DNA of 64,000 bases from Anolis carolinensis (lineage: Eukaryota), in NCBI RefSeq assembly GCF_035594765.1, contig NC_085846.1:20757190-20821189 (forward strand). The letters run 5' to 3'. Shown piece by piece: positions 27,075 through 64,000 of the stretch. Position 1 is the stretch's first letter. Every line of letters starts with the position of its first letter. The notes below the pieces were generated by a model. The model saw only the letters and a list, made by a program, of their open reading frames with translations, searched no databases and was not told the DNA's origin. The translations under genes were made by a program, and so were the position numbers.

Positions 27075-28449
27075 ATTTTGGCTAGGAAAATAAAATTTCT
27101 AGAGGAAAAAAGCATACTTCCAGCAAGAATCAAAGTTAAGTCTCCTAATAAGAATTGTGGAGGAAAAAGGGTGAATCAGATAGAAATGAGAATAGTGGAA
27201 TTTGAGATGGAAAAGAGAATACGTAGAAACAAGTATAAGATGTAATTGGAAAGAAATGGGATACCAAAGCACTGGATTCACAAATCGTTTCGACATCTTA
27301 AAGACATGACTATGATTTGAATGCCAGGCATACACAAACAAAAGAAAAGACAAGAAAATGAAAATAAGTATGTGAAAATATCTGCAGAAAATAATGAAAT
27401 GAAATCAATACAAAGAACATGTAGAAATAAAGGAAGATCTACTTAGTATCTGGGACTGGATTCACGTTTTGCGAGAAACTAGGATACAAAATCTCACATT
27501 TTCACATGGAAAACATTTCTAATCAAGTTCTTCCAGATTAACCATCAAACAAAGTCTCATCCCCCACACACAAAACCAAAATATATATTTATATAAATAA
27601 TAAAGAAAGGACTTAGTAACACATTAAAGATCTTCCCTGCAGTGCCACAGGGCTCTCAAGCAAGCAATTAATCTCTTAAGAAATACACCTATTTATTGAT
27701 ATGCCTTGAGCAAACCAGCAAGGTGTTGCTATTGAATTCTCTTCTTTTTCATGATTACAGTAATTCCAATAATTATTGTTCTTTAGTTAATGCTGGCAAG
27801 AAATGTGTCATTGTCCAAGCAATTTTATGTCAGAACTCCCCTTCCAAACCACCCCGACAGAAAAACAACATTTATTTTCTAATCTTTCTGTATCTCCCAA
27901 TAGTGAAGAAAAGCTGTAATAAAACATAGTAAAATAATTTAAAAGCTCATCAAATTAAAATAGACACCTCATCTCAAAAATGATAAACTTGATTTTATGC
28001 CTGTCCTTTAGTATATGTGTTTTAATTGTCTTGTTTACATCTATGCATTTTTACTGTCATGTATCCCTTGAGGGTTGTTTGTGGTTGTTTATCTATTGGT
28101 CATTTTATTTGTTTCTTGTAATTATTTTTAATAGTGATGTGTACTATGACTGGGCTTTTGTTTTGTTTGTTTAGTGCAGTGAGGAAGGTTAGACTGTAGT
28201 GCTGAGGGCTTTTGGGTGGGTAAAGAGATATTTCCTAAGATTTCTCATGAGTTATTGGTTTGGGTTTTGGTTCTGTTGGACTTTGGAAAGTGATTGAGGG
28301 TCCGAGTATGTATTGGTAAGTGTAATTAGTTCTCTCAGGAGAGTAGGTTCTAGAACATTTGAGAAAGATCAGTGAGAAAGGGTGGAATACCTTTGAAGGT
28401 TTTTTGAGTGGTACTGTTGGAAGGTTTTTGGTGAAAGTTGTACAGGAAA

Positions 28450-29478
28450 ATGAATCAGTTGGGAACTCATGGGAATACTGAACTTTCTCACCTGTGTGAA
28501 CTTATGGGGAAGTCGCTTGACCTCGTCTTCTCACAACTTGCTACATTAAATGAGAAGATAGACTACCTCTTCAAAGGGATCTCCCTCTTGGTGAGCAATC
28601 CTGGTCAGTGTTACATCGGGAAGGAAGAGGACATCGCGACTGCCACTTCAACCGAGTATAAGTGGTCTTTGACTTCTGATGGGGAGGGTGGGGAATGGCA
28701 ATCAGAACATAAGGAGGAATTTTTGAAGGAAGATGGGGACGTTGAGAATGAGAGACAGCTTCCTCATGACTACAGGGGAGAAGGGAGGGCTGGGCATAAG
28801 GTTACGGATCAGGGTTTAAAAAGGACAATTGCACATGGAATATCCGAGTCTGGCCTGTGCACACTTGACCCAATGCGCCACCAAAAATATTTACCTCAAT
28901 TAGAAAAATTGGCGTTTGAAATAACAGACTCATGGTTGAATAGGGGCAGATGGACCTCCAGGAGAGCGGTACAGGAGTCCCTCGGTCAAATACTATCTGT
29001 GAGCCCAAGTGTAGTCAAAATTAAGTTCATTTCATGGCTACGTAGGGACTTTCAAGCTCAGGACCGCTCCATACGTCTCGTTATCACCTTTGATGATAGC
29101 ACTTTAATTGAAGCACTTTGGGCGCGTAAACCCCTGTTGAATTCATGGGGTATTAATATTAGGAAGGTATTTCTGGACCCCACAATCCGCCCCTTGATGG
29201 CAGGTTCGGAACTGCATTTTCAAGGTACCATTAGTTCCAGAATGGTTAGTGCCCATGACTCTTTATCTAGGTCCCCTCCACTCTTAGAATCTTGTGTAGT
29301 GTCCCCCATTTCAACTCTAGACCCTTCCCAATCTATTCTCGATTCCCGCCCAGAGACATTGCTCTTGTTTAGTCAATCTAGTTCCCCTGACTGCTCCATC
29401 ATCTCATCATTACAGGATTCATTCTCAGACTCTAAGCAGGATAGAATCCTGAGTCGCTCCCCATTTATGGACAGCTGA
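28450..29478 (+). CDS. LINE ORF1 (coiled-coil-like N-terminus, RRM-like middle, Ser-rich tail)
   Basis: 342-aa open frame from ATG 28450. Heptad-like LDLVFSQLATLNEKIDYL, the motif RLVITF...LWARKPLLNSWGINIRKVF, and a position directly upstream of ORF2. Confidence 0.7.
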   Translation: MNQLGTHGNTELSHLCELMGKSLDLVFSQLATLNEKIDYLFKGISLLVSNPGQCYIGKEEDIATATSTEYKWSLTSDGEGGEWQSEHKEEFLKEDGDVENERQLPHDYRGEGRAGHKVTDQGLKRTIAHGISESGLCTLDPMRHQKYLPQLEKLAFEITDSWLNRGRWTSRRAVQESLGQILSVSPSVVKIKFISWLRRDFQAQDRSIRLVITFDDSTLIEALWARKPLLNSWGINIRKVFLDPTIRPLMAGSELHFQGTISSRMVSAHDSLSRSPPLLESCVVSPISTLDPSQSILDSRPETLLLFSQSSSPDCSIISSLQDSFSDSKQDRILSRSPFMDS

Positions 29479-32400
29479 CTAGGGCATCGCAATGAGAGCT
29501 CTATCCTGCCTGTCGCCCTGGGGGGAGTGGACCGGAGCCTGGGGGAGACCATTGAGGTCGTGTGGGGGAGGAGGAGGAGTGGTCACCTTTATCCCAGGGA
29601 TAAGCGCAACAGAGTTCTTGCGACCCTGGAGAAGGATAGGAGTGGTAGCCTCCATGACAGTCCCCTCCGTTTGAAGGTCCTGCTATTTAATGCCAGATCC
29701 GTCAATGGTAAATCAGCTATCATCCAGGATTTGATCCTGGATGAAGCGGCGGATCTGGCTTGCATCACCGAGACCTGGTTGGATGAGCCCGGCGGGGTAA
29801 ATCTCGCCCAGCTGTGTCCTCCAGGTTTCGGGGTGCAACAGCAGGCCAGAGCCGGGGGGCGGGGAGGTGGGGTTGCGGTGGTCTTTCGGCAGACAATCTC
29901 CCTGGTCAGGTGCGCCATCCCGCAATCTGCAGGTTTTGAGTGTGTCCATCTTAAGGTGGGTACCCGGGACAGTTTGGGGATTCTGCTGGTGTACCGTCCA
30001 CCCCGCGACACGGCAGTCTCCCTGCCCAAGCTGGCAGAGGTGATCTCTGGTGCGGCTTTGGTCTCTCAGCGGCTGGTAGTGCTGGGGGACTTTAACATTC
30101 ATGCCGAGGCCACATTAACTGGTGCAGCTGAAGACTTCATGGCCGCCATGACGACCATGGGACTGTCCCAAGTGATATCTGGTCCCACTCATCAAGCTGG
30201 ACACACACTTGACCTGGTTTTTGTTGCGGCAGATGGTGAGGTCGGAGTGGAAGAGCAAAATATTCTTCCGTTGTCATGGTCCGATCACCACCTGATCAGT
30301 TTAAGACTCACTGTGACCTCAAACCTCCGCAGGGGTGGTGGACCCATTAAGATGGTCCGCCCCAGGAGACTGATGGATCCAGATGGATTCTTGAGGTCTC
30401 TTGGGGATCTTCCTGTCATGGAGGCTGACGATCCTGTCGATGCCTTGGTAGATCGCTACAATAGCGAGATGTCCAGGGCAATTGACATGATCGCCCCCGA
30501 ACGTCCCCTCTCATTGCGAAGAGTCACTTCGGCTCCCTGGTTCACGGAGGAGCTGGCAGTGATGAAGCGCTCGAGGAGGGGACTAGAGTGCCACTGGCGG
30601 AAAACTCGTAGCGTTTCTGACCGAGCACGGGCTAGAGCCGCTATTAGGGCCTACTCCGCGGCTTTGCGGGCAGCCAGGAAGACCTTCACGACTGCCCGCA
30701 TAGCGTCTGCAACTAACAGACCATCGGAGTTGTTTCGGGTCGTCGGAGAGCTCCTTCACCCTCCTGAGGGGGGAGGGGCACCCGAAGACTCGGCAACTCG
30801 GTGCAGCGAGTTCGCGCACCACTTTGCAGACAAAGTCGCTCAGACTCGCTTCGACTTGGATGCTAGTTTTGTTGCAGTGCCAAAAGAGGTAACTGAGGCA
30901 CCTGTCTGTTCGAACTTGTGGGATTCATTTCAGCTTGTTCGCCCGGATGACGTGGACAGGATCCTTGGGGCGGTGAGAGCGACCACTTGCTCTGCAGACC
31001 CTTGCCCCTCGTGGCTAATTAAATCGGCCAGAGGAGGGTTGGTAGAGTGGTTTGTGATGATAATTAATGCCTCTTTGGATCAAGGCAAATTTCCATCTGT
31101 CCTCAAACAGGCCATAGTGAGGCCTATATTGAAGAAGGCCTCCCTTGATTCGGCCATTCTAAACAACTACAGACCAATCTCGAACCTCCCTTTCTTGGGC
31201 AAGGTCCTGGAGCGGGTGGTTGCCTCGCAGCTCCAGGGTTTCCTGGATGACACCGATTTTCTGGACCCATCGCAGTCTGGCTTTAGACCTGGGCACAGTA
31301 CTGAGACGGCTTTGGTCGCCTTGGTGGATGACCTCCGCAGGGAGCTGGACAGGGGGAGTGTGACCCTGCTGGTTCTCTTGGACATCTCAGCGGCTTTCGA
31401 TACCATCGACCATGGTATCCTTCTGGGACGGCTCTCCGGGATGGGCCTTGGGGGCATGGCTCTGTCGTGGCTTCAGTCCTTCCTGGAGGGCCGTTCCCAG
31501 TTGGTGAAGCTGGGGGACACCTGCTCAGACCCCTGGCCTTTGACCTGTGGGGTCCCGCAAGGTTCCATTCTGTCCCCCATGCTTTTTAACATCTACATGA
31601 AACCGCTGGGAGAGGTCATCCGGAGTTTTGGAGTTCGGTGCCATCTCTATGCAGATGACACTCAACTCTACTACTCCTTTCCACCGAACTCCAAGGAAGC
31701 CCCCCAGATACTGAACCAGTGCTTGGCAGCTGTGATGGGCTGGATGAGGGCGAATAAGCTGAAGCTTAATCCCGACAAGACAGAGGTCCTCCAGGTCAGT
31801 CGTATGTCCGATCGGGGTATTGGGTGGCTACCTGTGCTTGACGGGGTCGCACTCCCCCTGAAGGCGCAGGTCCGCAGTTTGGGGGTCCTCCTGGACTCAG
31901 CACTGACACTTGATGCTCAGGTGTCGGCCGTGGCCGGGAGGGCCTTTGCACAATTAAAACTTGTGCGCCAACTGCGACCTTACCTCGTGAAGTCTGATCT
32001 GACCACGGTGGTCCATGCCTTAGTTACCTCTAGACTGGACTATTGCAATGCACTCTACGTGGGGCTGCCCTTGAAGACGGCCCGGAAACTCCAACTAGTT
32101 CAACGTTCGGCAGCCTTGCTTCTAACTGGAGCAAATTATAGGGAGCGGTCAACCCTCCTGCTTAAGGAGCTCCACTGGCTGCCGTTCACCTTCCGGACCC
32201 AATTCAAGGTGCACGTGATCACCTACAAAGCCCTGAACGGTTTGGGACCCTCCTACCTTAGGCATCGCCTCTCCCCCTACGAACCTGCACGATCTCTTCA
32301 TTCGTCGGGGGAGGCCCTCCTCTCGCTCCCACCTCCGTCACAAGCACGGTTGGTGGGGACGAGAGAGAGGGCCTTCTCCGTGGTGGCCCCCCGGCTCTGG

Positions 32401-32493
32401 AACTCGCTCCCCAGGGAAATCAGGCAAGCCCCCACCCTGGTAGCATTCAGAAAGAGCTTGAAAACCTGGCTCTTTACTCAAGCCTTTAGATAA
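29479..32493 (+). CDS. LINE ORF2: APE endonuclease plus reverse transcriptase, uninterrupted
   Basis: Motifs NARSV, CITETW, VYRPP, VLGDFNIH, GHTLDL, SDH, NYRPISNLPFLGKVLE, QSGFR, LDISAAFDT, GVPQGSILSP, YADD and LHWLP. The frame is open from immediately after the ORF1 stop. Confidence 0.97.
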   Translation, partial: LGHRNESSILPVALGGVDRSLGETIEVVWGRRRSGHLYPRDKRNRVLATLEKDRSGSLHDSPLRLKVLLFNARSVNGKSAIIQDLILDEAADLACITETWLDEPGGVNLAQLCPPGFGVQQQARAGGRGGGVAVVFRQTISLVRCAIPQSAGFECVHLKVGTRDSLGILLVYRPPRDTAVSLPKLAEVISGAALVSQRLVVLGDFNIHAEATLTGAAEDFMAAMTTMGLSQVISGPTHQAGHTLDLVFVAADGEVGVEEQNILPLSWSDHHLISLRLTVTSNLRRGGGPIKMVRPRRLMDPDGFLRSLGDLPVMEADDPVDALVDRYNSEMSRAIDMIAPERPLSLRRVTSAPWFTEELAVMKRSRRGLECHWRKTRSVSDRARARAAIRAYSAALRAARKTFTTARIASATNRPSELFRVVGELLHPPEGGGAPEDSATRCSEFAHHFADKVAQTRFDLDASFVAVPKEVTEAPVCSNLWDSFQLVRPDDVDRILGAVRATTCSADPCPSWLIKSARGGLVEWFVMIINASLDQGKFPSVLKQAIVRPILKKASLDSAILNNYRPISNLPFLGKVLERVVASQLQGFLDDTDFLDPSQSGFRPGHSTETALVALVDDLRRELDRGSVTLLVLLDISAAFDTIDHGILLGRLSGMGLGGMALSWLQSFLEGRSQLVKLGDTCSDPWPLTCGVPQGSILSPMLFNIYMKPLGEVIRSFGVRCHLYADDTQLYYSFPPNSKEAPQILNQCLAAVMGWMRANKLKLNPDKTEVLQVSRMSDRGIGWLPVLDGVALPLKAQVRSLGVLLDSALTLDAQVSAVAGRAFAQLKLVRQLRPYLVKSDLTTVVHALVTSRLDYCNALYVGLPLKTARKLQLVQRSAALLLTGANYRERSTLLLKELHWLPFTFRTQFKVHVITYKALNGLGPSYLRHRLSPYEPARSLHSSGEALLSLPPPSQARLVGTRERAFSVVAPRLWNSLPREIRQAPTLVAFRKSLKTWLFTQAFR

Positions 32494-33054
32494 AGATTGC
32501 TCATCCAGAAGCAATCTGAATCTGTGACCATTCTTGTACCGGTTTGCACCTTTTACCTTTGTCAACTCGATATAGACACAGGGTCTATTCCCATCCCAAT
32601 TTGCACTTCCAGAATTTCCACACTTTATCAGTCACCTTGTGTTTACAATATTTATATGGTGCACTTTACCCAGTCTACTTTTACAATCTCTCAGTTTTAA
32701 TCCATGTTTTTATTAGTTCTTGTTTTTTATTGGCTAATGTTTTATTTTTATTTTTTTTATTTTTTTATTGTGCAAGTTGTTGTCTATTGCTGTGTTTTAT
32801 ACTGCTACTGTTTTTATTCGGGCTTGGCCCCATGTAAGCCGCCCTGAGTCCCCTTCGGGGAGATAGAGGCGGGGTATAAAAATAAAGTTATTATTATTAT
32901 TATTATTATTGAGGAGAGGCAGATAACAGATAAATTATTATTATTCACTGAGATCAATAACAGTGCTTTGATGGTAAATAAGTATGTGAATGTGTGATGA
33001 AAAGAGGTGGGTGAGAGGACCTATAGCCTAAATCTAACTGCTGGTGTAAACTTA

Positions 33055-37306: not shown

Positions 37307-38184
37307 CATTAAGGTTCTTTTTCACAAGATTCATTTATATGTGATAGTTTGTGAGACATTCTGTTTGTAGAAATTGGACTTACTTGGCTGCAAGTTGGGT
37401 CTAGATCTATCAATTTGCAAACTGTATTGTTTTCCAAGAGGGGATGAATGGGAGAATTCAGCAACATATTTTGGAGCTGACATAACTATTTCCCTATTGC
37501 TATTATTGGGAGGAATGGATTTTTAAAAACTCTTTTTATATAGACTGTGTGAGTTTGCAAGGTTTCAGTTCAGGTAGTGAACCCATTACTTCACCCTCCC
37601 CAATCACACTTTGGATTATACTTGTTATTTAACTTTACAATTGATCAATTGAAATCAGTGTGATGTAAGGTTGTAATATATACCAACAAATGAAAACATG
37701 GATTATGATGGATATATTCAAATGATAATCATTTATTTTTATGTGTAATATTTAGAATTGATCTTTGATATATATAACTATTTTCCTGTTTAGAAGGATT
37801 ACACTTTCAGAACTTATAAGACCCATTGATTTCAGTGTACTTATTTAAGGTGTAACATATAATCTAATTGAACTGCATTAAGAAGCAACACATTTAAATT
37901 GCCCTATGGTCATCATATCTTTATTAAATATTTTTAATTTTTAATTTGTTCGATTAACAATAAAAAAATCTCTACTTAAGATATACAAACATACACTATT
38001 GCACTTTGAAACTTTAATATAAAGGTATATCTATTTCTGTATGCATTCCTAATGTGTGTGAGAGATGTGTGTATGTTTGTGTATGGAATTCAAATCTTTC
38101 TCACAGCAAAAAGAAAATTGTGAATATTATTCACTACTTTCTTTGAGAAGAAAGTTAGTTAAGAAGTATGTCCCTACTATAGGG

Positions 38185-38841
38185 AGTGGTCAACGCCCCT
38201 CTTTAAGCAGCTCCACTGGCTACCAATAAGTTTCCGGGCCCAATTCAAGGTGCAGGTTATTACCTAGCAGGACCTGCTTATCTCCGTGACTGCCTCCTCC
38301 CCTATGAACCCACGCGGGCCTTGAGATCTTCTGGGGAGGCCCTCCTCTCACTCCCACCCCCGTCTCAGGCGCGGTTGGTGGGGACGAGAGAGAGGGCCTT
38401 CTCGGTGGTGGCCCCTCGGCTCAAGAATTCCCTCCCCAGGGAGATCAGGCTGGCACCCTCACTGTCCATCCTTAGAAAGGACCTTAAAACATGGTTATTT
38501 CGATGTGCATTCTAATAAATAGTCCCGGTTAGTTATTAGTGGCCACAACTACTCCACTTTATCACACCCCACTGTTATTGATTGAACTCTGTAATGAGAT
38601 CCTTAATTCCCTTTTGTAGAGTCTGCTGAATTTTATCTTACAGTTTGTATATTTTGTTCAGACTCTAATGTTCTAATGTTTTATGTTGATATTTTATGCT
38701 GGTTTGTATGATTATACTATTTTACCTGTTTTACATTGGTTTAATTATGATGTATTTTATTATATTTTGGAACTGGGCTTGTCCCCATGTGAGCTGCCCC
38801 GAGTCCCCCCTGGGGAGATGGGAGTGGGATATAAAAATAAA

Positions 38842-38878
<37 letters not shown>
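38185..38878 (+). mobile_element. 5'-truncated L2 copy related to the intact element
   Basis: LHWLP..RSSGEALLSLPPPSQARLVGTRERAFSVVAPRL matches the ORF2 C-terminus. It has the same 3' stem-loop and (TTA)n tail. Confidence 0.9.
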
Positions 38879-39487: not shown

Positions 39488-40269
39488 TGCTGAAATTGGA
39501 AAATTGATAACTTTAATTAATGAAAGCAGTGGACAACTATAAAAAGAACAGAATTTAGTGAATATATGAGAACAAAATAGTTTTTTTAATTTTGATTGAC
39601 AGTTAAATTCATTAATAAATAAACATAATTTAAAGTAGTAATAGTTGATAATTTACAATTATAAACTGGCAAGTGGGAAGTCATACATACTCCTATGTTA
39701 TTTAGGGGGATTTTTGTATGTAATTGCAATAGTAAAAGTTATTAAAATTGTATTACTAAATTGTTAATGTTTCCCTTTTTGTTATTTTTCCATTGTATAT
39801 GTAGTTTATACTTTTAGTATGGTGGTATTTTGCTTGGGGATAACTATACAGTTGTTGTGGATATCTTCTCAATCTTAACTCCTATGGCTGGATTCTTGAT
39901 CTGCACTTTCCTCAGAAAATGCTACACTATTTTGCTGAAGCTTGAAGGAAGATAAGAAAGAATTAAAAGGGTAAATTTTCTGTGGTTGAATCCCATTAAA
40001 GTGAACTATTACAGGTCTCATTGATTACAGTAGTGGTGAGTATAGGACATTATACTGGAAATGTTTCCATATTTCTCTACCTGAAATACTAGGGGAAACT
40101 CTACTTTGGCCAAAAGTCTTACCCCTACAGAAATTCTATAGGTTTCTACAAAACTGGAGGTCATAAAAATTCAAAATTGTATGTTGGTCTAACAATTTTG
40201 AGTTCTAGATCCAAAAATTACCTCAGATTTGCTCCATTAAGTATACTTTTTCCTCAAATCATTTTTATG

Positions 40270-40760
40270 GCCCAGCTCACCTGTCCGAATGTATCTCCCT
40301 CTATGAACCACCTCGTAGGTTAAGATCTTCTGAGGAGGCCCTACTCTCAGTCCCACCTCCTTCACAGGTGTGGTTGGTGGGAAAGAGGGACAGGGCCTTC
40401 TCAGTGGTGGCCCCTTGGCTGTGGCACCCCCTTCCCAGCAAAATTAGATCAGCTCCCTCCCTTCTGAAATTGAAAATGTGGATGTGGGAGCAAACCTTTG
40501 AACAATAACTCCGTGCAATAAATAAATATGGAATAAATACAATTTTGACTGGAATGGCTCCTGGACTATGATTTTGGGTTGTATGGTTTTAATTATTAGT
40601 TTTAATATTTAGATGTTTTTAACTTTTTGGTTTTTAATGTATATGTTTTTATGTGTATGTCTGTTTATGCAGCATCAAATTGTTGCCTATTTGTATGCCT
40701 CTCTGAGGTCCTCTTCAGGGTGAGAAGGGCGAAGTATAAATAAAGTAAATGAATAAATAA
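40270..40760 (+). mobile_element. 5'-truncated L2 3' fragment
   Basis: YEPPRRLRSSEEALLSVPPPSQVWLVGKRDRAFSVVAPWLW, followed by a 3' stem-loop and (TAAA)n. Confidence 0.85.
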
Positions 40761-60774: not shown

Positions 60775-60916
60775 TGTATGTGGTTATTTATGACTTGCTT
60801 TTATTGTCTGATTGATTGGTTTTATTGTTTTGTTTTTATATTGTTCTGTTCGGGCTTGGTCCCATGTAAGCCGCCCTGAGTCCCTTCGGGGAGATGGGGC
60901 GGGGTATAAGAATAAA

Positions 60917-60970
<54 letters not shown>
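60775..60970 (+). mobile_element. Short L2 3' end closely matching the intact L2, with (TTA)n tail
   Basis: tcgggcttggtcccatgtaagccgccctgagtcccttcggggagatggggcggggtataagaataaa is nearly identical to 32818-32886. Confidence 0.9.
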
Positions 60971-61701: not shown

Positions 61702-61916
61702 CGTTGAAATCTGCTCTGTTTTGGATTTGGAAAAAAATACTATGCAGGTGAATAATTCATCTCAAAATTGGAGGAGGCTTATCTTTCCCAGAATTCAATC
61801 ACCTAAGGAGGGTTTTTATAGCAGCAACAATTAAACCCAAAAGCTTCCTTGTCAAGATCTAGTATGATTCCCTGTCTCAAAATAATGATGGCTCACACTA
61901 TAGAATTATATAACAG

Positions 61917-62388
61917 TTCTGGTCCAATTTACCTGTCCGAACGTATCTTCCCCTATGAGCCCACAAGAACCTTAAGATCTTCTGGAGAGGCCCTGTCTCG
62001 GTCCCACCCGCCTCACAGGCACGGCTGGTGGGGACGAGAGACAGGGCCTCCTCGGTGGTGGCTCCCTGGCTGTGGAACTCCCCCCCCCCCAGTGACATTC
62101 GGCAGGCCCCATCCCTTTTGGGGTTCAGAAAAAAACTGAAGACCTGGCTATGTACGCAGGCATTTGAAGAATAAGCATGTGTTGGCTTCGACGCGATCTG
62201 AATTACGGCTCTTGTATAAGGTCTGGTGGATGAATGGCATAAGCACTTTGCATTGTTTTAAACTTTGTATATTGTATTTTATGACTATTTTATGACTGTT
62301 TTAACTGTTTTAATCATTTTAGTTTATTGTATATCAGTGTAACGGCATCAATTGCCACTTGTAAGCCGCCCTGAGTCCCCTGGCGGGG
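61917..62388 (+). mobile_element. 5'-truncated L2 3' fragment lacking its tail
   Basis: GPIYLSERIFPYEPTRTLRSSGEAL.., then a UTR and gtaagccgccctgagtcccc, running directly into another L2 ORF2. Confidence 0.85.
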
Positions 62389-64000
62389 TCTGGTGTGGGA
62401 TTCCCCTGAGAGCATAGCCTTCCTACTGGTGTACCGTGCGCCTAGTGCACCAGCAGACAGCCTATCCCAGCTGCTCGAGACTGTGTCGGAGTGGTCCTTG
62501 AGGTTCCCCAGACTTATCGTCCTTGGGGATTTCAATGTCCACGCTGATACAGACTCTTGCTCAGCAGCAGCTATGGACCTAGTGTCCACCATGGAGACAC
62601 TAGGACTCTCGCTCTGTAGTACTGGGCCCACGCATCAGGCAGGACACATGTTAGATTTGATCTTCAGCGCAGGAATTCAAGTGACCCAAGCCTCTATTAT
62701 AGAGGTTCCATGGTCGGATCACTGTGCCCTGAGGGTCAGGCTGGAGCATGCCTACCCACCTGACAAGGGCACCAAGCCAATTTGGGCTCGCCCAAGAAGA
62801 CTTATGGAACCTAGTAGGTTCCAGAATGCTCTGAAGGATCTGGAGCCTGTCAGCGACTCGATCGATGTGCAGGTGGACACATGGAACATCAGGCTATCCA
62901 ATGCACTCGACGAGATCGCCCCTAGACGCGCTCTCCAACCCCGCCGAAATCGGTCTCCTTGGTTCACCGAGGAACTTCGATCAATGAAGCGGGAAAAGAG
63001 ACGGCTAGAGGGCGTGTGGCGAGAACTTCATGACAGAGCTTCGAGATCAGCTTATAGGGCATTTATGGAGTCCTATGAGCATGCTATCATCGAAGCAAAG
63101 CGAGTATATTATGCCTCTTTGATAGCATCCGCCAGTTCACGACCGGCAAAATTATTCAAAATAATTAGATCTCTAACGACGGTTCCTACTGTCCCAAAAA
63201 GTGATGATCAGGCCCCTTCAGCCGAGGCCTTCCAAAGCTATTTTGTTGACAAGATCTCACTACTACGCCGGGACCTCCCTGCCACAATTAATACAAGGAG
63301 AGAACTTGAGACTCCATGGCCACTTGCTGGGCCTACCCTCGACCGGTTCATCCCACTGGACGCAGAGGCTGTCGATAGGCTCATAGCTGCAGCTGGACCG
63401 ACCACTTGCTCCCTCGATCCATGTCCCTCCTAGTTGGTAAAATCCTGCATGGAGGGATTATGTGAGCCTCTGTTGAAGATAATAAACAGCTCCCTGGAGC
63501 AAGGAGTCTTTCCAGAGGTTTTAAAAGAGGCGGTGGTCTCTCCCCTGCTGAAGAAACCAGATTTAGATCGTTTGGTTCCCTCCAGCTATCGCCCAGTTTC
63601 GAACCTCTCGTTCCTGGGCAAGGTGATTGAGAGGGCAGTAGCGGAGCAGTTGCAACAGTTCCTAGACAACACAGCCGGATTAGATCCCTTTCAGTCCGGC
63701 TTTCGTGCGGGACACGGGACAGAGACTGTGCTGGTCTCTATCACGGATCACCTTCGATGCCAGCTTGATCAGGGCGGGTCGGTGTTGCTCGTGTTATTAA
63801 ACCTTACTGCAGCATTTGACACAGTCAATCACAATCTTTTGACCCACCGCCTTGCCGTTGTTGGAGTCAGGGGGACAGCTTTAAATTGGCTGGCCTCCTT
63901 TCTTCACAACCGTGGACAGCGAGTGGAGAAGGGAGGCCTGGTCTCTGAAAGGTCCCCTCTACTTTGTGGGGTGCCTCAAGGGGCCATTCTCTCCCCTCTG
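62389..64000 (+). pseudogene. 5'-truncated L2 ORF2 of a second subfamily, with a nonsense codon at 63431-63433; runs off the window
   Basis: Motifs LVYRAP, LGDFNVH, GHMLDL, WSDH, PWFTEEL and DPCPS* (TAG where W is expected). It continues in frame with YRPVSNLSFLGKVIE, QSGFR, AAFDTV and GVPQGAILSP. Confidence 0.92.

What the first reader, a model, noticed from the sequence alone, without database searches (positions are those of the whole stretch)
29470..29530. Candidate programmed stop-codon readthrough (UGA-CUAG) fusing ORF1 to ORF2 in an intact L2 LINE
Seen: ORF1 (ATG 28450) and ORF2 are in the same frame. They are separated by one TGA (29476-29478) in the context AGC-TGA-CTA-G, and the next 16 codons up to the GTG called by the ORF track are open. 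ORF2 has no in-frame ATG until EDFMAAM, about 200 codons in and past most endonuclease motifs; the only nearby ATG (29492) is out of frame. CTAGGGC (29479-29485) can pair with GCCCTGG (29515-29521). Known: UGA-CUAG is the leaky-stop context of vertebrate readthrough genes such as AQP4 and OPRL1, and alphavirus readthrough uses UGA-C. Inference: ORF2 is made as a ~1347-aa ORF1-ORF2 fusion, setting the ratio of the two products in a gag-pol-like way. This differs from the reinitiation or coupling usually described for LINEs.
Basis: partly seen in the sequence, partly recalled or inferred. Interest (0 to 1): 0.85.

Follow-up and report, generated by a model that had tools for sequence, protein, structure and literature searches.

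The report
Lizard LINE with conserved leaky stop
An apparently intact L2 jumping gene of an Anolis lizard has its RNA-binding gene and its enzyme gene in one reading frame, split only by a stop codon in a known leaky setting. Four distant relatives share this layout, so the enzyme is probably made as a rare fusion, as in retroviral gag-pol, though no experiment has shown it.

Summary
ORF1 (28450-29478) ends AGC-TGA-CTAG. ORF2 (endonuclease + reverse transcriptase, to 32493) follows in the same frame and has no in-frame ATG for 220 codons.

New evidence here:
- The stop is not a private mutation. Contigs identical across the junction stand at about 20 times single-variant depth.
- A second A. 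carolinensis family, with only 40% ORF1 identity, keeps an identical 11-nt island AGCTGACTAGG, the frame and an ATG-free spacer.
- Three much more distant elements with a homologous ORF1 also have ORF1-TGA-ORF2 in frame, each followed by C: CAACUA (a CARYYA motif), CUA and CGU.
- Varanus L2 copies without ORF1 carry ATGs where this copy has the spacer.
- No ORF1 homologue among 1.84 billion representative proteins is fused to ORF2.

The proposed hairpin is not supported: it folds no better than shuffled sequence and is not conserved.

Best reading (about 0.6) is programmed UGA readthrough making a 1347-aa ORF1-ORF2 fusion. The main rival (about 0.3) is AUG-independent termination-reinitiation.

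I found no paper describing readthrough in a LINE. The scan noted the same junction on other copies of this genome (s1-535981, s1-552482, s1-558061).

The parts
27362..27376 (+). candidate 5' target-site duplication AAATAAGTATGTGAA
   Evidence: A 15-nt exact repeat of 32976-32990. About 2e-4 such matches are expected by chance between the two regions searched. Candidate only.
27377..28449 (+). putative 5' UTR of the L2 element (AT-rich)
   Evidence: Lies between the candidate duplication and the ORF1 ATG. GC is 0.29-0.41. The boundary is inferred, not shown.
28450..29478 (+). ORF1 (342 aa + TGA): N-terminal long helix (28468-28596) and RRM-like domain (28897-29169), C-terminal third predicted disordered
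   Evidence: Translation. No Pfam hit. AlphaFold model: helix 7-49 and a beta-alpha-beta-beta-alpha-beta core at 150-240 with pLDDT above 90. The best PDB fold matches are RRMs, including the human L1 ORF1p central domain 2w7a, at weak E-values. There are 11 homologues, and every one that a source names is from A. carolinensis.
29473..29483 (+). conserved junction island AGC-TGA-CTAGG (stop codon 29476-29478)
   Evidence: Identical to L004:6003-6013 in a family with 40% ORF1 identity. The flanks on both sides are barely alignable.
29479..29550 (+). 24-codon spacer, open, without ATG, in frame with both ORFs
   Evidence: The first 13 codons have the same length in L004, and the only indel between the two is 3 nt. 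Near-cognate codons in good Kozak context: CTG 29518, GTG 29527, CTG 29539.
29551..32493 (+). conserved ORF2 body: N-terminal motif IEVVWG (29551), endonuclease 29686-30288, reverse transcriptase 31135-31794, TAA 32491-32493
   Evidence: Pfam. The motif xIxVVxGxGRY is shared with Anolis, Varanus and Podarcis L2 proteins. Contig depth rises 10- to 100-fold from the 29539-29605 bin onward.
32494..32910 (+). 3' UTR ending in an (ATT)7 microsatellite tail (32890-32910)
   Evidence: Read directly.
32976..32990 (+). candidate 3' target-site duplication
   Evidence: About 65 nt lie between the ATT tail and this repeat, and they are unexplained.

Best explanation
This is a full-length L2-type LINE of Anolis. 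Its enzyme, ORF2p (endonuclease + reverse transcriptase), has no start codon of its own. It is probably made when a few percent of the ribosomes translating ORF1 decode the UGA at 29476-29478 as a sense codon and carry on in the same frame. The linear context UGA-CUAG favours this.

The product would be a 1347-aa ORF1p-ORF2p fusion. Normal termination would give the abundant 342-aa RNA-binding ORF1p. One leaky stop would therefore set a gag : gag-pol-like ratio and tie the enzyme physically to the ORF1p/RNA particle.

Shown: the anatomy, its conservation, and the absence of an alternative AUG.
Inferred: that readthrough happens in lizard cells, that the fusion is the active form, and the ratio.
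For: 1. The anatomy is as described.

2. The context is the published one. UGA-CUAG gives efficient readthrough in four mammalian genes, 12 nt 3' of the stop suffice, the motif is conserved throughout vertebrates, and UGA-CUA alone gives about 1.5% (PMC4132726).

3. The stop is a family feature.
- An 852-nt contig that spans the junction with 2 differences has word depth 134, against about 5-8 for single-variant contigs in the same run.
- A 634-nt contig in another run has 0 differences.

4. L004 is an A. carolinensis element with 40% ORF1 amino-acid identity and 84% ORF2 nucleotide identity. It keeps AGCTGACTAGG exactly, the frame, and a 25-codon spacer without ATG.

5. Three deeply diverged elements with a homologous ORF1 core (29-33% identity; endonucleases 29-40% identical to each other) are all in frame with TGA followed by C:
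- L005: TGA-CAACTA, which fits the CARYYA readthrough motif.
- L006: TGA-CTA.
- L007: TGA-CGT.

6. In L005 the Pfam endonuclease profile starts at residue 5 after the stop. The only ATG lies after the first conserved Asn motif.

7. None of the 11 ORF1 homologues among 1.84 billion representatives is fused to ORF2. Most end in Ser immediately before the stop.

8. Varanus L2 copies have no ORF1 and carry in-frame ATGs where Anolis has the spacer.

9. No SECIS element was found.
Against: - There is no experimental or ribosome-level evidence, and no RNA run could be confirmed.
- Near-cognate CTG and GTG codons in good Kozak context lie 13-20 codons after the stop, so restart there is possible.
- From my own knowledge (Alisch et al. 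2006, which I could not read here), human L1 ORF2 translation does not need its AUG.
- There is no stimulatory RNA structure, and the base just 5' of the stop is C, not the preferred purine. Efficiency may therefore be only a few percent.
- L004, L005 and L007 are degraded copies. The organisms behind L006 and L007 are unknown.
- Only five junctions could be read as DNA.
- Read laying showed contigs, not reads, and hid 514 variant rows, so minority variants at the TGA cannot be excluded.
Confidence: 0.6

Rival explanations
1. Termination-reinitiation without an AUG. Ribosomes finish ORF1 at the UGA. Some 40S subunits stay on the RNA and restart within the next roughly 20 codons on a near-cognate codon (CTG 29518, GTG 29527 or CTG 29539), giving a separate ORF2p of about 990 aa. 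This resembles what is proposed for human L1.
For: - LINEs are known to couple ORF2 translation to ORF1 termination: L1 and SART1, reviewed in PMC5972666 and PMC3708506.
- Three near-cognate codons after the stop have a purine at -3 and G at +4.
- Sequence shared with many other L2 copies starts only around 29518-29551.
Against: - This model predicts no constraint on frame, stop identity or the base after the stop. Yet five of five elements are in frame, all use TGA and all have C next, and four of the five have a published leaky context.
- No UGGGA (TURBS motif 1) occurs within 120 nt upstream of the stop in any element.
- There is no downstream structure of the SART1 kind.
- In L005 only 4 codons separate the stop from the endonuclease domain.
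Confidence: 0.28
2. Independent internal initiation of ORF2, by an IRES-like entry or from a shorter or subgenomic transcript. The in-frame leaky stop would then be incidental.
For: An IRES has been proposed for mouse L1 (my own knowledge, not checked here). The ORF1 and ORF2 modules differ in base composition and in copy number, so they could in principle be expressed separately.
Against: There is no AUG for 220 codons, no structured region, and no explanation for the conserved frame and the UGA-C context across lineages.
Confidence: 0.07
3. This copy, or its family, is a dead nonsense mutant of a single-ORF element. It would have been spread in trans by other L2 families.
For: Fish and frog L2 sub-clades have a single ORF (PMC7140322), and the Varanus copies have no ORF1.
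Against: - All ORF1 homologues are stand-alone proteins that end at the equivalent place.
- The same stop is present in a family with 40% ORF1 identity and in three distant lineages.
- Published work describes lizard L2 as having two ORFs.
Confidence: 0.03

Closest known systems
Vertebrate UGA-CUAG readthrough genes (OPRL1, OPRK1, AQP4, MAPK10, MDH1; Loughran et al. 2014, PMC4132726)
   Same: The stop and the next four bases are the same. The next five, CUAGG, match OPRL1's CUAGGC. Both depend on linear context alone, with no RNA structure needed.
   Different: Those genes add short C-terminal extensions to host proteins. Here the downstream frame is a 1004-codon enzyme of a transposon with no start codon of its own. 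The base 5' of the stop is C rather than a purine.
Gammaretrovirus gag-UAG-pol readthrough and alphavirus nsP3-UGA-C-nsP4 readthrough
   Same: One in-frame leaky stop sets the ratio of an abundant structural or RNA-binding protein to a rare polymerase fusion. Alphaviruses use UGA-CUA(G).
   Different: Murine leukaemia virus uses UAG plus a pseudoknot about 8 nt downstream. No structure is detectable here. This element is a non-LTR retrotransposon, not a virus.
Human L1 unconventional termination-reinitiation and silkworm SART1 UAAUG coupling (PMC5972666; Alisch 2006; Kojima 2005)
   Same: A bicistronic LINE RNA in which ORF2 translation depends on ribosomes that have translated ORF1, and ORF2p output is low.
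   Different: L1 has a 63-nt spacer and an ORF2 AUG. SART1 has overlapping stop and start codons and a downstream structure. Here there is no AUG, the two ORFs share a conserved frame, and the stop context is leaky.
2A 'ribosome skipping' peptides in L2, CR1 and Ingi clade LINEs (Odon et al. 2013, PMC3708506)
   Same: Translational recoding used by APE-type LINEs, the L2 clade included, to make several products from one frame.
   Different: 2A separates products within one ORF. Here a stop codon separates them, and the rare event joins them.
Candidate -1 frameshift (U_UUA_AAC) at CR1 ORF1/ORF2 junctions noted by this scan in the same genome (s1-519648 and others)
   Same: A second LINE clade in the same lizard that seems to make an ORF1-ORF2 fusion by recoding.
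   Different: A different recoding event (frameshift against readthrough). These are AI notes that I did not check.

Membership tests
L2-clade LINE (lizard sub-clade) | ORF2 with an APE-type endonuclease followed by a reverse transcriptase | tested here: met
   Pfam Exo_endo_phos at 2.7e-15 and RVT_1 at 7e-37.
L2-clade LINE (lizard sub-clade) | Two ORFs, with a GC-rich ORF2 (about 55%) and a more AT-rich ORF1, as published for lizard L2 | tested here: met
   GC is 0.45-0.50 over ORF1 and 0.52-0.62 over ORF2, against PMC7140322.
L2-clade LINE (lizard sub-clade) | Short microsatellite-like 3' tail | tested here: met
   (ATT)7 at 32890-32910.
L2-clade LINE (lizard sub-clade) | RT phylogeny places it with reference L2 elements | not tested
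   No named reference LINE sequences were on hand. The closest proteins are unnamed Anolis, Varanus and Podarcis RT proteins. The clade of L005-L007 is likewise undetermined.
Programmed stop-codon readthrough, UGA-CUAG class | UGA immediately followed by CUAG | tested here: met
   29476-29482 reads TGACTAG.
Programmed stop-codon readthrough, UGA-CUAG class | The downstream frame is open and protein-coding under constraint | tested here: met
   1004 open codons encode conserved endonuclease and RT domains.
Programmed stop-codon readthrough, UGA-CUAG class | Stop, context and frame conserved among diverged relatives | tested here: met
   L004 has the identical 11-nt island. L005, L006 and L007 are in frame with TGA-CAACTA, TGA-CTA and TGA-CGT. 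Only five junctions were sampled.
Programmed stop-codon readthrough, UGA-CUAG class | Measured readthrough product (reporter, footprints or peptide) | not testable with these tools
   All runs were available only as contigs, and none is confirmed as RNA.
Termination-reinitiation (calicivirus / SART1 / L1 type) | A restart AUG at or near the stop | tested here: not met
   The first in-frame ATG is 221 codons downstream. The only nearby ATG is in the +1 frame and is absent in L004.
Termination-reinitiation (calicivirus / SART1 / L1 type) | Upstream 18S-complementary motif (UGGGA) or a downstream stimulatory structure | tested here: not met
   No TGGGA within 120 nt upstream in five elements. Fold z-scores range from -0.6 to +2.0. 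This was a simple motif check only.
L1-like (type II) ORF1p: coiled coil + RRM + CTD | N-terminal coiled coil and a central RRM | tested here: inconclusive
   The model has helix 7-49 and a beta-alpha-beta-beta-alpha-beta core with pLDDT above 90. RRMs top the PDB fold search, but only at E of 1e-3 to 1e-2, and L1 ORF1p 2w7a is at rank 49. No folded C-terminal domain is predicted.

The most novel reading that the evidence does not exclude
A whole, old group of vertebrate LINEs that share this helix-plus-RRM ORF1 makes its reverse transcriptase only as an ORF1p-ORF2p fusion, by programmed UGA readthrough. It would be the first readthrough-type recoding in non-LTR retrotransposons. The leaky context has turned over between the CUAG, CUA, CARYYA and CGN types while the frame was kept. 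Tethering ORF2p to ORF1p would give a physical basis for cis-preference.
Probability: 0.5. Interest if true: 0.8.

Novelty: new variant of a known kind. Interest (0 to 1): 0.72.

Why it matters
How LINEs translate ORF2 from a bicistronic RNA is a long-standing open question, and the proposed answers so far are reinitiation, an IRES, coupling and 2A skipping. A LINE that uses the retroviral gag-pol solution, one leaky stop, would add a new mechanism and link LINE and retroviral expression logic. It would also supply a natural and very simple test system: about 20 nt of context, a frame relation and no RNA structure. An apparently intact copy is available for it.

It also matters for annotation. 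Gene finders start these ORF2s at the Met at residue 221 or splice around the stop, so intact elements are mis-modelled.

Tried and rejected
- **RNA stem.** The CTAGGGC/GCCCTGG stem, or any structure 3' of the stop, is not supported. It folds no better than shuffled sequence in all four elements. It is not conserved in L004. It starts at +4, where the ribosome sits (inference).
- **Selenocysteine.** Rfam finds no SECIS or other family at E of 1 or less, apart from a chance miRNA-like hit.
- **Other copies in the window.** There are only 5'-truncated L2 pieces and no second junction.
- **ORF1 word-index searches.** These gave 2 and 3 hits and nothing new.
- **Fetching DNA for protein hits.** P0001, P0003, P0124 and P0125 are not on record.
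- **Other squamates.** The Rhineura copy (L002) is 5'-truncated. The Vipera copy (L003) is too degraded to read a junction.
- **Metagenome scan with the ORF1 core.** It found no relative.
- **Read laying.** Only contigs were available, 514 variant rows were hidden, and the other species (run X21) showed nothing upstream of 29673. It gives no base-level census of the TGA and no evidence of expression.
- **Literature.** The searches of the held library that bear on this question found no paper describing stop-codon readthrough between LINE ORFs. Novick et al. 2009 and Alisch et al. 2006 are not held.
- **My recollection about Ta11.** I recalled that Arabidopsis Ta11 has an in-frame stop. I could not verify this and now recall its two ORFs as overlapping, so I dropped it.
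- **Clade of L005-L007.** No tandem 3' tail was found in L005, and I built no tree for lack of named references.
Full report
**What is there**

- ATG 28450 opens a 342-codon ORF1 that ends GAC-AGC-TGA (29476-29478) and is followed by CTAGGGC.
- From 29479 the same frame is open for 1004 codons to TAA 32491-32493. The ORF lister starts this ORF at GTG 29527, 16 codons after the stop.
- Pfam finds an APE-type endonuclease (residues 70-270 of the 29479 frame) and a reverse transcriptase (553-772). It finds nothing in ORF1.
- The first in-frame Met of ORF2 is residue 221 (30139). That is after the endonuclease motifs LLFNARS, ITETW and GDFN. The only nearby ATG (29492) is in the +1 frame.
- The element ends in an (ATT)7 tail.
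- A 15-nt exact repeat, AAATAAGTATGTGAA, at 27362 and 32976 is a candidate target-site duplication. If real, it implies a 5.6-kb full-length insertion.
- ORF1 is 45-50% GC and ORF2 is 52-62% GC. This matches the published description of two-ORF lizard L2 (PMC7140322).
- A 784-aa A. carolinensis UniRef protein is 100% identical over the part of the query it covers, and its length fits a start at Met 221. The genome is therefore Anolis.

**Is the stop a private mutation?**

No, on three lines of evidence.
- I laid Logan contigs of four runs on 28400-30400. Contigs identical or nearly identical across the junction were found: 28998-29631 with 0 differences, and 28724-29575 with 2 differences. The second has word depth 134, against about 5-8 for diverged single-variant contigs in the same run. 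So roughly twenty near-identical copies carry this junction. Two caveats apply: these are contigs rather than reads, and most variant rows were hidden.
- An exhaustive HMMER search with ORF1 against 1.84 billion representative proteins found 11 relatives. The closer ones are stand-alone proteins of about 320-356 aa, and none is fused to an ORF2. All the named ones are from A. carolinensis. Their C-termini line up with this one, and most end in Ser.
- The scan's notes report the same UGA-CUAG or UGA-CUA junction on three other L2 copies of this genome. I did not see that DNA.

**Conservation in relatives**

Five junctions could be read as DNA.

| Element | Source | ORF1 identity to window | Junction | In frame? 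| ATG between stop and enzyme? |
|---|---|---|---|---|---|
| window | Anolis | - | GACAGC TGA CTAGGGCAT | yes | none for 220 codons |
| L004 | A. carolinensis chromosome | 40% (aa) | GGGAGC TGA CTAGGCCCT | yes | none in the 25-codon spacer |
| L005 | A. carolinensis | 29% (core) | ACATCT TGA CAACTACAT | yes | only one, after the first conserved Asn motif |
| L006 | Logan contig, organism unknown | 33% (core) | GTGAAT TGA CTATCCCAC | yes | none |
| L007 | Logan contig, organism unknown, degraded | 33% (core) | CCTAAC TGA CGTCAAATT | yes | none |

L004:
- Its ORF1 is only 40% identical in amino acids to the window's, while its ORF2 is 84% identical in nucleotides.
- The copy is degraded. It has a premature TAA 12 codons before the end of ORF1, and an in-frame stop where the window has the Trp codon of IEVVWG.
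- In the ORF1 frame it nevertheless reads ...NSGS*LGPLNN...IEVV.
- The eleven bases AGCTGACTAGG are identical to the window. The flanks on both sides are barely alignable.
- The stop is in frame with both ORFs. The spacer is 25 codons without an ATG, and the only indel against the window is 3 nt.

L005, L006 and L007:
- They share the ORF1 core at 29-33% identity. Their endonucleases are only 29-40% identical to each other and are not detectably similar to the window's at E of 1e-3 or less.
- In L005 the bases after the stop, CAACTA, fit the CARYYA readthrough motif. The endonuclease profile begins at residue 5 after the stop.
- In L006 the endonuclease begins at residue 22 after the stop.
- In L007 the endonuclease lies 13 codons after the stop.

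So in five of five elements the two ORFs share a frame, the stop is TGA and the next base is C. If the window and L004 count as one lineage, and conditioning on the discovery case, the remaining three lineages being in frame (1/3 each), using TGA (about 1/2) and having C next (about 1/4) has a joint chance of the order of 1e-4. At this divergence unconstrained bases would have randomised.

The context also changes type between lineages (CUAG, CARYYA, CUA, CGU) while the property 'leaky' is kept. That looks like selection on function rather than inherited sequence.

**A natural contrast**

Varanus komodoensis L2 proteins are about 50-55% identical in the ORF2 N-terminal region. They read M-ESSLA-M-LPLAFPGER...AIGVV where Anolis reads NESS--ILPVALGGVDR...IEVV.
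- Two Varanus copies share their 5' boundary exactly at that first ATG (L001:2984 and L008:3972).
- Neither has an ORF1 homologue upstream.

So where ORF1 is absent, ORF2 has its own AUG. Where ORF1 is present, the AUG is missing and the frame is joined through a leaky stop.

**What the context is known to do**

Loughran et al. 2014 (PMC4132726) reported the following.
- UGA-CUAG drives 3.5-31% readthrough in human cells.
- 12 nt 3' of the stop suffice, with no structure needed.
- UGA-CUA alone gives about 1.5%.
- UGA is the best of the three stops with this motif.
- CARYYA works with UGA or UAG.
- The motif is conserved in those genes throughout vertebrates, which suggests lizard ribosomes respond to it too (inference).

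A few percent of fusion per ORF1p fits the low ORF2p to ORF1p ratio that LINEs need.

**What is not supported**

However, the region folds worse than shuffled sequence (z = +1.4, +2.0, +1.1), and the equivalent regions of L004, L005 and L006 show nothing (z = +0.8, -0.6, 0.0).
- The stem is absent in L004.
- It begins at +4, inside the mRNA channel of a ribosome paused on the stop. Known stimulators start about 8 nt downstream (inference from established knowledge).
- Rfam finds no SECIS.

**The main rival**

The main rival is termination followed by restart without an AUG.
- For it: LINE ORF2 translation is known to be coupled to ORF1 termination in L1 and SART1 (PMC5972666). CTG 29518, GTG 29527 and CTG 29539 have good Kozak flanks.
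- Against it: restart gives no reason for the conserved frame or for UGA-C. No UGGGA motif lies upstream. In L005 only four codons are available for a restart.

I put readthrough at about 0.6, restart at about 0.28, independent internal initiation at about 0.07 and 'dead nonsense mutant' at about 0.03.

**Side results**

- ORF1 is predicted to be a long N-terminal helix plus an RRM-like domain, with a disordered tail. Fold matches are to RRMs, including the L1 ORF1p central domain, but they are weak.
- The ORF1-plus-spacer module and the ORF2 module have different histories:
  - Contig depth jumps 10- to 100-fold at 29539-29605.
  - Similarity to L004 switches from near zero to 84% at about 29518.
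  - The junction island is the only conserved piece of the ORF1-side module.

**Novelty**

Four searches of the held library aimed at this question, and the readthrough, reinitiation and recoding reviews I searched, gave no description of stop-codon readthrough between LINE ORFs. Key subscription papers were not readable, so prior mention cannot be excluded.

The scan found this before on other DNA of the same genome (s1-535981, s1-552482, s1-558061).

Noticed in passing
window 62408-64000: A second, 5'-truncated L2 copy on the + strand. It is 46% identical in amino acids to this ORF2, starts at about residue 164 and runs off the window end.
   Followed up: no
window 38178-38865, 40245-40499, 60849-60940, 61897-62165: Several short L2 3'-end fragments, 74-94% identical in nucleotides to the 3' end of this element.
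   Followed up: no
window 28400-30400 and L004: ORF1 and ORF2 have different histories. Contig depth steps up 10- to 100-fold at about 29540. L004 has 84% nucleotide identity in ORF2 but only 40% amino-acid identity in ORF1. This suggests ORF1 modules are exchanged or evolve far faster than ORF2.
   Followed up: partly
window 28450-29475 (ORF1): ORF1p has no Pfam family. It is predicted as a long N-terminal helix plus an RRM-like fold. Every homologue that a source names is from A. carolinensis, the two Logan homologues are of unknown origin, and the 1.84 billion representatives hold no relative named from any other organism.
   Followed up: partly
window 27362-27376 and 32976-32990: A 15-nt exact direct repeat that could be the target-site duplication. 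About 65 nt, containing a second ATT run, lie between the (ATT)7 tail and the 3' repeat and are unexplained.
   Followed up: partly
L001:2984 and L008:3972 (Varanus komodoensis): Two L2 copies share an exact 5' boundary at the ORF2 ATG, with no ORF1 and no shared 5' UTR. This may be an ORF2-only L2 lineage with almost no leader.
   Followed up: partly
P0129 and P0127 (A. carolinensis proteins): A RefSeq 'ras-GEF domain-containing family member 1A isoform X4' contains an ORF1-like segment, which may be exonisation or an annotation artefact. A UniRef protein joins the ORF1 N-terminus directly to RT sequence, which looks like an internally deleted L2.
   Followed up: no
window 29492-29672: The out-of-frame ATG at 29492 opens a +1-frame ORF of about 60 codons across the spacer. 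The ATG is absent in L004, so the ORF is probably meaningless.
   Followed up: partly
same genome, other windows (scan notes): The scan's notes describe CR1 elements of this lizard with a U_UUA_AAC slippery site at the ORF1/ORF2 junction. If that is right, two LINE clades in one genome use different recoding routes to an ORF1-ORF2 fusion.
   Followed up: no
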